64,000 nt of DNA from Bugula neritina (GCA_964035545.1 OZ037773.1:7407751-7471750), one strand, 5' to 3'. Numbered from the stretch's first letter, positions 21,501 through 24,500 are shown. The notes: generated by a model not told the origin, from the sequence alone. A program made the numbers and translations.

Positions 21501-24500
21501 TTCATGTCGGTTATTTATGTCCTCAATGCAAAGTCTCACAAAGTTCATCTTTTAAATCTAAACAGTTCTGCAGGTAACTGTGCTTAAATTGCAATTAAAA
21601 AAAATATTTTGTCTAAATATCTAAAATTGAATAATGTAGTCTCTGTATGAACACTACCACTTAGCACCTCATTGTAAACACAACAAAAACCAGCTTCTAA
21701 TAAACTATGACAAGTAGACATGTTTAATAATATAGAAACATTAGCATGAATAATATATAGGTGCTGTTGGTTTAATAAATTTCACGCTTTTCTTTACACT
21801 TACTCAGCTTTTAGCTTTAATAAATTTAGACCCCAGACTGTGGAATATGAGAAATATTAATTATTTTTTAAAGACTACATTTGATTTTGTGATTGAAGGA
21901 AGCTATTCTTATTGTTTCTTTTTGTAACTGTCATTGGATATGATGCATGCAAGTTCAATATTGGAAGTAGCAAATTGAGTAGAATGTATAGTTTTGTAAA
22001 CATACTACTTCTAATTAGCAGTTCAAAGTTTAATTATGGAATTATGGGTAAGTTTTTAAACAAACTTTCCAAAAGTTTTGACTTTCAACACATTTTATCA
22101 TTAAAAAAACCTTTGGCAGCATTGCAGCTGCAGAAAATAAAAAACTTCTATAAAGCAAATCTGAATAATTAAGTACAAAGCTCAGTTATATCAATATTCA
22201 AATAGCTATATATCTACATAAAAAGCCATGCTACATGTTAAAATCAATTATGCTATATACCTATTATTATAAACAACTTAATTTACTTAAAATTGAAAAT
22301 ATGTGTTCCCTACCTTGAGAGTGGGTGTGCAAAATGCCGGCAAACCAAAATAAAGTTGAGATTAATAGCCTCATCTTAAAGAGGACAAAATATTGAGTAG
22401 ACTTTCTATTTGAAATTTGACTTGGTTAGCTAAGTCATTACGTTAGAGCATAGCGCATGGAGTTTTCTAGTGCAGGCTGAGTAAGTGTTGAATATCAGAG
22501 TGAAAGCATGCAGGTTCATAGTATTTACAATGTTTTAGCCAATCAACATTCAGCTCTTGTAGCTTTCAACCAATTGTATGCTTTGAAAGCAGTGACTTTA
22601 AATCAATACTTTTTAATTTCATTTGCAGATGAAAAGCCTGAACGTATGCTACTCAAGCATATGTCTCTTTAAACTCAAAGTCATTACTCATTCACTCAAT
22701 ATTACAATGAATCATTTACACGGGCCTCTTTTCTACACTGATGACGTTTGGTAGCATAAATCATTAAGTAGCCATTGTGACACTCATGATTTCATCAAAT
22801 GTAATAAATTATATATATATATATATATATATATATATATATATATATATATATATATATATATATATATATATATATATATATATATATATATATATAT
22901 ATATTAAAACATTCAAATTTCTAGCTTATTATGTGAAAGGGAGAAACCGGTAAATTAATGAAAATAGTGTACTGATTGCATAGTATTTGACACAGAAAAT
23001 GTTTATTTACAACTAATTCTTTAGGGCTATAGTAATATAGTCTTCTAGCATGTAATGAGTCTTAGTGTAAGATCTGGTTTGTTACAAAAGGGTGGGATAA
23101 CCACTGCCACACCCCCAAATATCCACATAGCATAGTAAGAATACTACAGAAAAGTGCACATCTAGCTTTTTTTATAATTATTAATAAACTGTGCATGTAG
23201 CTTATATTATTGTATGTTAAGATTTGTGTGTATTTTTACCAATGTGGTGACTTACTACACAATTCAGTATTAAGTTGAAGCATATATGAGTGTTTTGAGA
23301 GTCAAAATGGTTCAATCAAAAGAGTGTATTGAATAGAAAGCCGACAGACTAATTAGCAGAATTAAACAAATTTACCTACAATTACTTATAGAAAGTGTTT
23401 TCTTAGTCTTTGTACAGTAAGCAAACTTATTTTCGTTTATAGCAGACAGTAATTTCTTCATTTCTGTCTGACACAACTGTGCGCTTTGTGTAGCAGGTGC
23501 TTTGCAAGCCTGTCAACATATTCATATAATATGCTGTATACTTCACACCTTTTAAACAGTGTTTTCATATACTACTGTGTATTAAATGTTACAGCTTGCA
23601 TTGCTCACCCCTAATACTTCTACTGCTGTCATTACAGCTGCTGTCTACAGCCTAATTATTAATTATTCACGGCAAAACAACAAAAATCTACAACTGGTGT
23701 GACACAGCAAGCATGTATCAAACAATTGTCAGCTTGGTGCAAGCTTTAATCACCCAGTCTTTTCTAACAAATAAAATTCTACAAGACTTTGCTAGCCTAT
23801 AAAATCTAAGACTGACTTGTTTAAGGGAAAGAGTCAGCTAAGAAAAGGAAGTTGGGGTAATAGTAGGCAGGTGAAGTAAAAGTGTACAAAAAAACAAAAT
23901 ATCTCATGCCCTCGATTGATAACAAAAGCTTATTATCTTTTATATAAACAGCACCATTATTTCCATTAGACATCTAAATGAACAAACGAAGAGATGGCAA
24001 CTCCAAATTTGATTTTCCAAGCAATGGCTAAACTACTTTTGCTGGTCTAGTATAACACATGGTAACAGTTATGCTGCATTAACAGAGTCACTACTCACTC
24101 ACAGTTACTACTATTAGAATATAATAAGATATTTAAGCATGCCCAGCCACCAACCAACTGCAGGAGTTTGGTAATTGTCCCCCCTGGCTAGTTACTGAGT
24201 TATAATTGAGAAACATAAAGATTACTTTCAATTTTCCAGACTAATGGCTGTTTATATTATATAGAGGTCGTTTTTGCATAAACTATAGAGTGACCTTTAC
24301 TGTGTTTAGCCTATCAAATTCTTTCTATCAGAAGGGATGTGTTTATCAAGTTATCTAAGTTAGAAACTGTAAAAAGAGAAGCTTGATCATAGGATATTTC
24401 TACAGTTTATAGTTTTATGGGTTAACACAAGTTCATGCTTTTATAATTCTTTTAGGCAGTTTAAATTCAAACTGTTATACAAGTGCAAGTAAAAGCTTTT

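What the first reader, a model, noticed from the sequence alone, without database searches (positions are those of the whole stretch)
22314..22904. Hidden signal-peptide exon predicts a neurexin isoform starting at LNS2
Seen: MRLLISTLFWFAGILHTHSQ has a basic n-region, a hydrophobic core and a polar c-region. It splices in phase to EREQRIATF of LNS2, and a (TA)47 tract lies about 430 nt upstream. Established: known internal-promoter neurexins are beta (start at LNS6) and gamma (no LNS). An isoform lacking only LNS1-EGF1 is not one I know. Inference: a new internal promoter in this 6.7-kb intron.
Basis: partly seen in the sequence, partly recalled or inferred. Interest (0 to 1): 0.75.

Follow-up and report, generated by a model that had tools for sequence, protein, structure and literature searches.

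The report
Internal neurexin start exon before LNS2
Inside an intron of a moss-animal (bryozoan) neurexin gene, a conserved promoter-like block is followed by a small exon that codes for a secretion signal and joins in frame to the second laminin-G domain (LNS2). The gene therefore probably also makes a shorter neurexin, one I did not find described, that lacks its first two domains; no RNA from this species was available to prove it.

Summary
On the minus strand, ATG 22374 opens a 20-codon signal-peptide-like ORF. It ends at a good donor (AAG|GTAGGG, exon end 22314) in phase 1, the phase of the LNS2 exon acceptor at 18186.

The window is bryozoan, about 85% identical in introns to Bugula neritina. 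It is not human.

Evidence that the exon is real:
- In one B. neritina contig the ATG, the frame and the donor are kept. The AG in front of the ATG is lost, so it is not a cassette exon there.
- A block 130-350 nt upstream is 95% identical, against 87.6% for the intron. The whole 407-nt stretch has no indels.
- That block holds two inverted CCAAT boxes 31 nt apart.
- A second neurexin gene in this genome (contig C3) has the same layout in the same intron: twin boxes at the same spacing, then a signal-peptide exon in phase 1.
- Its Watersipora relative has a similar exon.
- A public 4.2-kb mRNA contig that groups with bryozoan neurexins encodes signal peptide directly followed by LNS2-LNS6.

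No RNA from this species was found. A second B. neritina contig has a 1-nt deletion in the exon, but it also breaks the constitutive LNS2 exon.

My probability that the exon is real is about 0.68, or 0.78 if rival 3 (the same exon, as the gene's main start) is counted. The scan reported the same idea earlier on another piece of this genome (s1-469235).

The parts
22314..22374 (-). Candidate isoform-specific coding exon: ATG plus 20 codons plus 1 nt (MRLLISTLFWFAGILHTHSQ), then donor AAG|GTAGGG in phase 1
   Evidence: It is 93.4% identical to B. neritina L006 (4 substitutions: 2 synonymous, I->F, A->T), and the ATG and donor are kept. A is at -3 of the ATG in all copies.
22375..22501 (-). Putative 5' UTR. 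The start site near 22501 (TCACTCT, Inr-like, 25 nt after TAAATA at 22521-22526) is inferred only.
   Evidence: 83% identical to L006 but without any indel. It holds three very short uORFs. The start site was not tested.
22500..22720 (-). Conserved promoter-like block
   Evidence: 95.0% identical to L006 against 87.6% for the whole intron, which puts it in the top 6% of intronic windows of this size. There are 0 gap openings in 407 nt where about 5 are expected.
22539..22574 (-). Two inverted CCAAT boxes (ATTGG) 31 nt apart start to start, 169 and 200 nt upstream of the ATG. The proximal one reads AGCCAATCA on the other strand.
   Evidence: It is the only match to ATTGG-N26-ATTGG in the 64-kb window and is kept in L006. 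The C3 paralog has the same spacing at L004:3404-3439. The genome holds 1,629 matches against 667 for the control pattern, and many loci show arrays with a 31-bp period.
18043..18186 (-). LNS2 exon 1, the acceptor exon shared by the alpha form and the proposed short form (phase 1 in, phase 1 out)
   Evidence: B. neritina protein P0001, named 'Nrx-1', is 100% identical over the part it matches.
24906..25127 (-). EGF1 exon, the last alpha-specific exon upstream of the intron. It ends ..GANCSV+G and the donor is GTGAGT.
   Evidence: Pfam EGF hit. 93.5% identical to L006.
30527..30611 (-). Tentative alpha-form exon 1 (MGTCWALCTFLVCGISCINGETPLLSLQ, phase 1, fits the LNS1 exon acceptor at 28430)
   Evidence: This rests on sequence only; conservation was not checked.
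22810..22904 (.). (TA)47.5 microsatellite. It is probably irrelevant to the promoter.
   Evidence: B. neritina has only a short, interrupted TA run here.
23300..23800 (.). Conserved non-coding block in the same intron, enhancer-like (TAATTAATAATTAG, CAGCTG motifs)
   Evidence: 94-96% identical to L006, with indels that are not multiples of three.
19450..19700 (.). Conserved non-coding block in the same intron, enhancer-like (AAAATTAATTAATCC, ATCAATCA motifs)
   Evidence: 97-99% identical to L006.

Best explanation
The 6.7-kb intron between the EGF1 and LNS2 exons of this bryozoan alpha-type neurexin gene holds a second promoter: a conserved block with two CCAAT boxes 31 nt apart. Transcripts that start there carry a short 5' UTR and a 61-nt coding stretch, ATG plus a 20-residue signal peptide. 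That stretch is spliced in phase 1 onto the ordinary LNS2 exon.

The product would be a membrane neurexin with the order signal peptide, LNS2, LNS3, EGF2, LNS4, LNS5, EGF3, LNS6, stalk, TM, and a cytoplasmic tail ending EWYV. It lacks LNS1 and EGF1. The signal peptide would probably be cut after THS (T at -3, S at -1).

Shown here: the sequence features, their phase, their conservation, and the parallel in the paralog. Inferred: promoter activity, the start site, use of the splice junction, and signal-peptide function.
For: 1. The candidate is the only one in the intron, and chance gives one in about 5-7% of simulated introns (0.75% with a donor this strong).
2. In Bugula neritina contig L006, which is about 85-88% identical in introns, the ATG, the open frame and the donor are kept. 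The exon is 93.4% identical, the same as the EGF1 exon (93.5%) and LNS2 exon 1 (93.1%). The AG just before the ATG is lost, which rules out a cassette exon there.
3. The upstream block 22500-22720 is 95% identical. There is no indel over 407 nt, against one gap opening per about 79 nt in the intron.
4. The twin ATTGG boxes with a 26-nt gap are the only such pair in 64 kb. They fit the extended NF-Y consensus. [quoted passage not shown]
5. The paralogous neurexin gene on contig C3 has, in the same EGF1-LNS2 intron, twin GATTGG boxes at the same 31-nt spacing, 142-173 nt upstream of ATG-MAAFEIIRIFATLWLFLSVTHLVSA|GTAATG. That exon is also in phase 1.
6. The Watersipora subatra relative of that paralog has a GATTGG box and then MSSIWLLSLLATINLLP|GTAAGC in phase 1, 4.8 kb upstream of its LNS2 exon. 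The chance of such an exon is 5%, 6% and 11% for the three loci.
7. The mRNA contig L007/P0025 (Logan, SRR17902662) has a stop three codons upstream of its ATG. A signal peptide is joined to LNS2 at the same junction residue, and it has five LNS domains, a TM segment and REWYV. It groups with the bryozoan neurexins (support 100/99 on the C-terminal region, 99 with Watersipora P0016 on the full length).
Against: - No transcript or splice-junction read from this gene or species was found. The word search with the exon's 52-aa frame found nothing, and the search with the LNS2 exon frame found only an ab initio B. neritina fragment.
- Neither the B. neritina nor the Watersipora annotation predicts such an exon.
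- Signal-peptide-like ORFs are fairly common in AT-rich DNA. My scan thresholds for the three-locus test were fixed after I had seen the candidates. No trained signal-peptide predictor was available.
- The second B. neritina contig (L009) has a 1-nt deletion in the exon, an R->L change at codon 2, and a T insertion in the distal box. The same contig also has two 1-nt deletions in the constitutive LNS2 exon 1, so it is either error-prone or a decaying copy.
- Between L006 and L009 the exon is no better conserved than the intron.
- The organism behind P0025 is unknown, and P0025 belongs to the paralog lineage, not to this gene.
Confidence: 0.68

Rival explanations
1. Chance ORF next to a conserved intronic regulatory element. 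The conserved block would be an enhancer or other cis-element of the alpha gene. The ATG-ORF with its donor would be an accident of AT-rich sequence and would never be spliced to LNS2.
For: The intron holds other conserved non-coding blocks of equal or higher identity (23300-23800, 19450-19700). Background signal-peptide-like ORFs with donors occur at about 0.03 per kb-strand. The exon is no better conserved than the intron between L006 and L009, and L009 has a frameshift. No RNA evidence was found.
Against: The accident would have to recur in phase 1 in three loci (joint chance about 3e-4 to 6e-4). It would also have to recur behind twin CCAAT boxes of identical spacing in two paralogs (about 1e-6 at the genome-wide rate of the pattern). 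The ATG, Kozak context and donor are kept in all copies. An mRNA of the same architecture exists in the clade.
Confidence: 0.17
2. Cassette or poison exon at the position of vertebrate splice site 1. It would be included between EGF1 and LNS2, read as DEAINLNF.., and would shift the frame so that the message is degraded.
For: In the window the exon is preceded by a pyrimidine run and an AG (ttttgtcctctttaag|ATG) and followed by a good donor. The position matches SS1 of vertebrate neurexins.
Against: The 61 nt are not a multiple of three and would give a stop 12 codons into the LNS2 exon (read). The AG is AAA in both B. neritina contigs. The paralog and the Watersipora exons have no AG at the corresponding place.
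Confidence: 0.04
3. The exon is real, but it is the main or only start of the membrane neurexin in bryozoans. The LNS1-EGF1 exons upstream would be joined rarely or would make a separate short secreted product, so the gene is effectively split rather than having an extra isoform.
For: The B. neritina annotation splits the locus at exactly this intron (254-aa, 138-aa and 1001-aa models). The Watersipora RefSeq model of the paralog starts at LNS2, and no LNS1 or EGF1 exon lies within 10 kb upstream. P0025 is a complete mRNA without LNS1-EGF1.
Against: The LNS1 and EGF1 exons are intact, conserved at exon level (93-97%) and keep phase-1 donors that fit LNS2 in both paralogs. The split gene models look like ab initio artefacts. 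One starts at an internal Met, and another reads into an intronic repeat.
Confidence: 0.1

Closest known systems
Beta-neurexin internal promoter (vertebrate Nrxn1-3)
   Same: A promoter inside an intron of the alpha gene. A short isoform-specific first exon supplies the ATG and a signal peptide and is spliced in frame onto a shared LNS exon. The result is an N-terminally shortened membrane neurexin (PMC12665717).
   Different: Beta starts at LNS6 and keeps one LNS domain; this form would start at LNS2 and keep five. Here the isoform-specific exon adds almost nothing beyond the signal peptide. The taxon is a bryozoan.
Gamma-neurexin (mouse Nrxn1-gamma; C. elegans nrx-1 short form)
   Same: A further internal promoter in the same gene family. 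It is the only short form accepted for invertebrates (PMC12665717).
   Different: Gamma has no LNS domain at all, and its promoter lies near the 3' end of the gene.
Alpha-like neurexins with four or five LNS domains in cnidarians and placozoans
   Same: Neurexin-type proteins with fewer than six LNS domains exist in nature (PMC11294457).
   Different: Those are separate genes in non-bilaterians, not products of an internal promoter of a six-LNS gene. Which LNS is missing was not compared here.
Vertebrate splice site 1 (SS1) cassette exons between EGF-A and LNS2
   Same: Small exons in the same intron position.
   Different: SS1 inserts keep the frame and are internal exons. This exon shifts the frame if it is used internally, and its upstream AG is not conserved.
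PHRED-1 type LamG-EGF-WD40 receptors (planarian; Aplysia XP_012941838.1 = P0131)
   Same: A signal peptide followed directly by five LNS domains that align with neurexin LNS2-LNS6.
   Different: It has an intracellular WD40 propeller and no EWYV tail, and it is a separate gene with no LNS1-EGF1 exons within 10 kb upstream (bioRxiv 10.1101/131789). It is not a neurexin isoform.

Membership tests
Alpha-type neurexin gene (host gene) | Repeated LNS (laminin G) and EGF domains in the order LNS-EGF-LNS, three times | tested here: met
   Pfam Laminin_G_2 and EGF hits on single exons. Thirteen to fourteen tblastn segments of alpha-neurexins lie along 28449-3236 in colinear order. B. neritina proteins of the locus are named Nrx-1.
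Alpha-type neurexin gene (host gene) | Single TM segment and a short tail ending in the PDZ-binding motif (E/Y)(W/Y)YV | tested here: met
   The last exon frame 541-876 ends ..ADSKEWYV. The C3 paralog ends ..NPKEWYV.
Internal-promoter neurexin isoform (beta/gamma logic) | Isoform-specific first exon with its own ATG and signal peptide | tested here: met
   MRLLISTLFWFAGILHTHSQ has n-, h- and c-regions, T at -3 and S at -1, and a Kozak A at -3. The scoring was heuristic only; no trained predictor was available.
Internal-promoter neurexin isoform (beta/gamma logic) | In-phase splice onto a shared downstream exon | tested here: met
   The donor is in phase 1 and the LNS2 exon acceptor is in phase 1. 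The same holds in the C3 paralog and in Watersipora.
Internal-promoter neurexin isoform (beta/gamma logic) | A functional promoter inside the intron | tested here: inconclusive
   A conserved indel-free block with twin CCAAT boxes is shared with the paralog. Activity cannot be shown from sequence.
Internal-promoter neurexin isoform (beta/gamma logic) | Transcripts that start in the intron and carry the junction | not testable with these tools
   No RNA of this gene was found. The only related case is the mRNA contig L007/P0025 of the paralog lineage from an unnamed organism.
Beta-neurexin | Starts immediately before LNS6 | tested here: not met
   The exon lies before LNS2, and five LNS domains follow it.
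SS1-type cassette exon | Internal exon that keeps the reading frame, with a conserved acceptor | tested here: not met
   It is 61 nt long. The frame shift gives a stop in the LNS2 exon. The AG is lost in both B. neritina contigs.

The most novel reading that the evidence does not exclude
Bryozoan neurexin genes carry an old, conserved third kind of internal promoter that predates the duplication which gave the two paralogs. It drives a five-LNS neurexin (LNS2 to LNS6) lacking LNS1-EGF1. This form may even be the main membrane neurexin of these animals. It would be a natural counterpart of the LNS2-LNS6 core seen in neurexin crystal structures.
Probability: 0.6. Interest if true: 0.65.

Novelty: new variant of a known kind. 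Interest (0 to 1): 0.6.

Why it matters
Neurexin diversity is thought to come from two or three promoters (alpha, beta, gamma) plus splicing, and invertebrates are credited with alpha and gamma only (PMC12665717). A further promoter that removes only LNS1-EGF1 would be a new way of trimming the ectodomain.

From my own knowledge, LNS1-EGF1 is the flexibly attached part of the alpha ectodomain and its function is poorly known. A natural form without it, kept in two paralogs, would give a comparative handle on what LNS1-EGF1 does. It would also suggest looking for similar starts in other animals.

The finding also flags that current bryozoan gene models break this locus at exactly this intron. 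Finally, it points to CCAAT boxes spaced 31 bp apart as a recurrent cis-module in this genome, which could help to find other start sites.

Tried and rejected
- Repeat or transposon origin of the exon: rejected, because the region is single copy.
- Cassette or poison exon: rejected as the main reading. It shifts the frame and the AG is not conserved.
- (TA)47 as a promoter feature: rejected, because it is not conserved.
- L009's 1-nt deletion as proof of no constraint: not accepted, because the same contig has two 1-nt deletions in the constitutive LNS2 exon 1.
- Aplysia 'neurexin-1' P0131 as a second example of an LNS2-start neurexin: rejected. It has a WD40 tail and is of the PHRED-1 type.
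- Antedon P0071, Owenia P0009, and the many vertebrate fragments whose models begin near LNS2: rejected as partial or ab initio models without a signal peptide.
- Watersipora RefSeq model P0016, which starts MSIVVVSALE: its start is read from an intronic tandem repeat directly in front of the LNS2 exon, so it is no evidence for a start site.
- Direct alignment of the two paralogous introns: no significant similarity beyond the boxes.
- Identifying the organism of SRR17902662: no paper mentions the run, and no close named relative was found.
- The tRNA-like stretch after LNS2 exon 1 (about 17940-18010): ARAGORN finds no tRNA.
- The 'hexamer lattice' first-intron signature mentioned in earlier notes could not be retrieved and was not used.

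Full report
**What the window is.** The window is AT-rich (about 33% GC). On its minus strand it carries a compact alpha-type neurexin gene. A tentative signal-peptide exon lies at 30611-30527, and the LNS1, EGF1, LNS2 and later exons follow. The last exon (541-876) ends in the PDZ-binding motif EWYV. The LNS2 exon matches a Bugula neritina protein named Nrx-1 at 100%. The introns are 84-88% identical to B. neritina contig VXIV02003393.1, here L006. The genome is therefore a close relative of B. neritina, a bryozoan, as earlier notes of the scan also say. It is not human, so nothing was withheld on that ground.

**Check of the observation.** All the sequence statements hold.
- ATG at 22374, twenty codons (MRLLISTLFWFAGILHTHSQ) plus one base, then donor CAAG|GTAGGG.
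- The EGF1 exon ends in phase 1 at 24906.
- LNS2 exon 1 starts at 18186 and needs one upstream base, so G+AG gives E and then REQRIATF.
- The intron is 6,719 nt.
- (TA)47.5 lies 436 nt upstream of the ATG.
- The peptide has R at position 2, a 13-residue uncharged hydrophobic core, and T at -3 and S at -1 before Q20.

**Chance.** It is the only candidate in the intron that combines these features. Simulated introns hold one in 7% of cases, and in 0.75% with a donor this strong. The region is single copy.

**Conservation in B. neritina contig L006.** The ATG, frame and donor are kept, and the donor becomes GTAAGG. There are four substitutions in 61 nt: two synonymous, I->F and A->T. The identities, all, are:

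| Region | Identity to L006 |
|---|---|
| Candidate exon (22374-22314) | 93.4% |
| EGF1 exon | 93.5% |
| LNS2 exon 1 | 93.1% |
| Whole EGF1-LNS2 intron | 87.6% |
| Promoter-like block (22720-22500) | 95.0% |
| 125 nt between block and ATG | 83.2% |

The AG in front of the ATG, which makes the exon look like an internal exon in the window, is AAA in B. neritina. The A at -3 of the ATG is kept. The promoter-like block is in the top 6% of intronic windows of its size. The whole 407-nt stretch from block to donor has no indel, while the intron has one gap opening per about 79 nt. A conserved block, then a looser but indel-free leader, then an exon at coding-exon identity is what a promoter with a first exon should look like. 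The intron also holds other conserved non-coding blocks, so conservation alone does not single this one out.

**The second B. neritina contig, L009.** It is only 88-92% identical to L006. It shows a 1-nt deletion in a T run of the exon, R->L at codon 2, and a T inserted in the distal CCAAT box. I do not count this against the exon. The same contig has two 1-nt deletions inside the constitutive LNS2 exon 1. It is therefore either error-prone in this stretch or a decaying copy of the whole gene.

**Promoter motifs.** The conserved block contains two inverted CCAAT boxes (ATTGG) 31 nt apart, 169 and 200 nt upstream of the ATG. On the other strand the proximal one reads AGCCAATCA, and in L006 the distal one reads AACCAATCG. 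Both fit the extended NF-Y consensus (my own knowledge of that consensus). ATTGG-N26-ATTGG occurs once in the 64-kb window on both strands. The genome has 1,629 matches against 667 for the reversed control. GATTGG-N25-GATTGG has 293 matches against 110, and many loci show three or more boxes in a strict 31-bp period. [quoted passage not shown] A TAAATA at 22521-22526 and a TCACTCT 25 nt further on suggest a start site near 22501; this is inference only.

**The paralog on contig C3.** The genome has a second neurexin gene on contig C3, 53% identical in LNS2 exon 1 and with a tail ending KEWYV. It has intact LNS1 and EGF1 exons and a 7-kb EGF1-LNS2 intron. In that intron lie two GATTGG boxes at the same 31-nt spacing (L004:3404-3439), both reading GACCAATCA on the other strand. 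They sit 142-173 nt upstream of ATG-MAAFEIIRIFATLWLFLSVTHLVSA|GTAATG. That exon is in phase 1, as the paralog's LNS2 exon requires, and no AG precedes the ATG. At the genome-wide rate of the twin-box pattern, finding it within 250 nt upstream of both candidate ATGs has a chance of about 1e-6.

**Watersipora.** The Watersipora subatra relative of this paralog is XP_067943283.1, here P0016. It has a GATTGG box and then (MLFIRDST)MSSIWLLSLLATINLLP|GTAAGC, again in phase 1, with ACCATG around the second ATG, 4.8 kb upstream of its LNS2 exon. With one common set of criteria each of the three loci has exactly one such candidate. The chance is 5%, 6% and 11%, and an empirical background gives similar figures. 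These thresholds were set after I had seen the candidates, so the joint value of about 3e-4 is optimistic.

**Does such a protein exist anywhere?** I searched all protein representatives with the B. neritina LNS2 fragment. Most models that begin near LNS2 are partial or ab initio artefacts. One is not: P0025, encoded on a 4,236-nt intron-less Logan contig from run SRR17902662.
- It has a 236-nt leader with a stop three codons upstream of the ATG.
- Its signal peptide (MQCLVVTAALFGSWWTLAFVGFLVVPTSCS) runs into E-KVPIVSAFTG.. at the same junction residue where the bryozoan exons meet LNS2.
- It has five LNS domains, a TM segment and REWYV.
- In a tree of the C-terminal region it falls in a clade with the window gene, the C3 paralog and Watersipora P0016 (support 100/99). 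On full length it pairs with P0016 (SH-aLRT 99, though both branches are long).

So an mRNA of exactly the predicted architecture exists in this clade. It belongs to the paralog lineage and comes from an organism I could not name.

**Literature.** A 2025 review lists alpha, beta and gamma in vertebrates and alpha and gamma in invertebrates (PMC12665717). Alpha-like neurexins with four or five LNS domains are described only as separate genes of cnidarians and placozoans (PMC11294457). Searches for an LNS2 start, for neurexin in bryozoans, and for internal promoters in invertebrates gave nothing closer. The Aplysia 'neurexin-1' model with a signal peptide and five LNS domains has a WD40 tail and belongs to the PHRED-1 type.

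**Verdict.** I give about 0.68 to a real alternative first exon driven by an internal promoter. I give 0.10 to the variant in which this is the main start of the membrane protein, 0.17 to a chance ORF beside an intronic regulatory block, and 0.04 to a cassette or poison exon. It would be a new variant of a known kind: the beta/gamma logic applied at a new position. The scan reported the same idea earlier on another piece of this genome (s1-469235). I saw that note only after reaching the same reading, and it adds no independent data.

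Noticed in passing
window 23300-23800 and 19450-19700 (also 17300-17500): Non-coding blocks 94-99% identical to B. neritina, inside introns that average 87.6%. They hold homeodomain-type (TAATTAATAATTAG, AAAATTAATTAATCC), E-box (CAGCTG) and ATCAATCA motifs and look like enhancers of the neurexin gene.
   Followed up: partly
L006 and L009 (B. neritina GCA_010799875.2 contigs VXIV02003393.1 and VXIV02000663.1): The draft assembly holds two copies of this neurexin locus that are only 88-92% identical to each other. L009 has two 1-nt deletions in the constitutive LNS2 exon 1. The cause may be very divergent haplotypes, cryptic species, or an error-prone contig.
   Followed up: partly
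whole genome G000, e.g. C4:3223074-3223203, C3:31979036-31979134, C1:1551513-1551890: GATTGG (inverted CCAAT) boxes recur in arrays with a strict 31-bp period at many loci (293 pairs against 110 for the control pattern). This may be a genome-wide promoter module or a family of 31-bp repeats.
   Followed up: no
window 52515-56974 (+): LTR retroelement with a 1,318-aa open frame (52808-56761) between two LTR-like repeats (52515-52706 and 56780-56974). It was observed only.
   Followed up: no
window about 37700-51100 (-): An ARID4/RBBP1-like gene (Tudor-like and ARID-like exon frames) lies directly upstream of the neurexin gene on the same strand.
   Followed up: no
window 7287-8564 and 13900-15200: Long minisatellites sit inside neurexin introns. 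The Watersipora RefSeq model P0016 translates a comparable minisatellite as protein (VVVAYSTLCCCRVFDS.. repeats), which is probably a gene-model error.
   Followed up: no
L008:9700-10030 (Watersipora subatra OY755164.1): The start codon of RefSeq XP_067943283.1 (MSIVVVSALE) is taken from an intronic tandem repeat just upstream of the LNS2 exon. The model is probably truncated at its 5' end.
   Followed up: partly
L007 (Logan SRR17902662_19585): A complete mRNA of a five-LNS neurexin with its own signal peptide, from an unnamed organism. It groups with bryozoan neurexins, and its leader is visibly more GC-rich than the rest of the contig (49.5% GC overall).
   Followed up: partly
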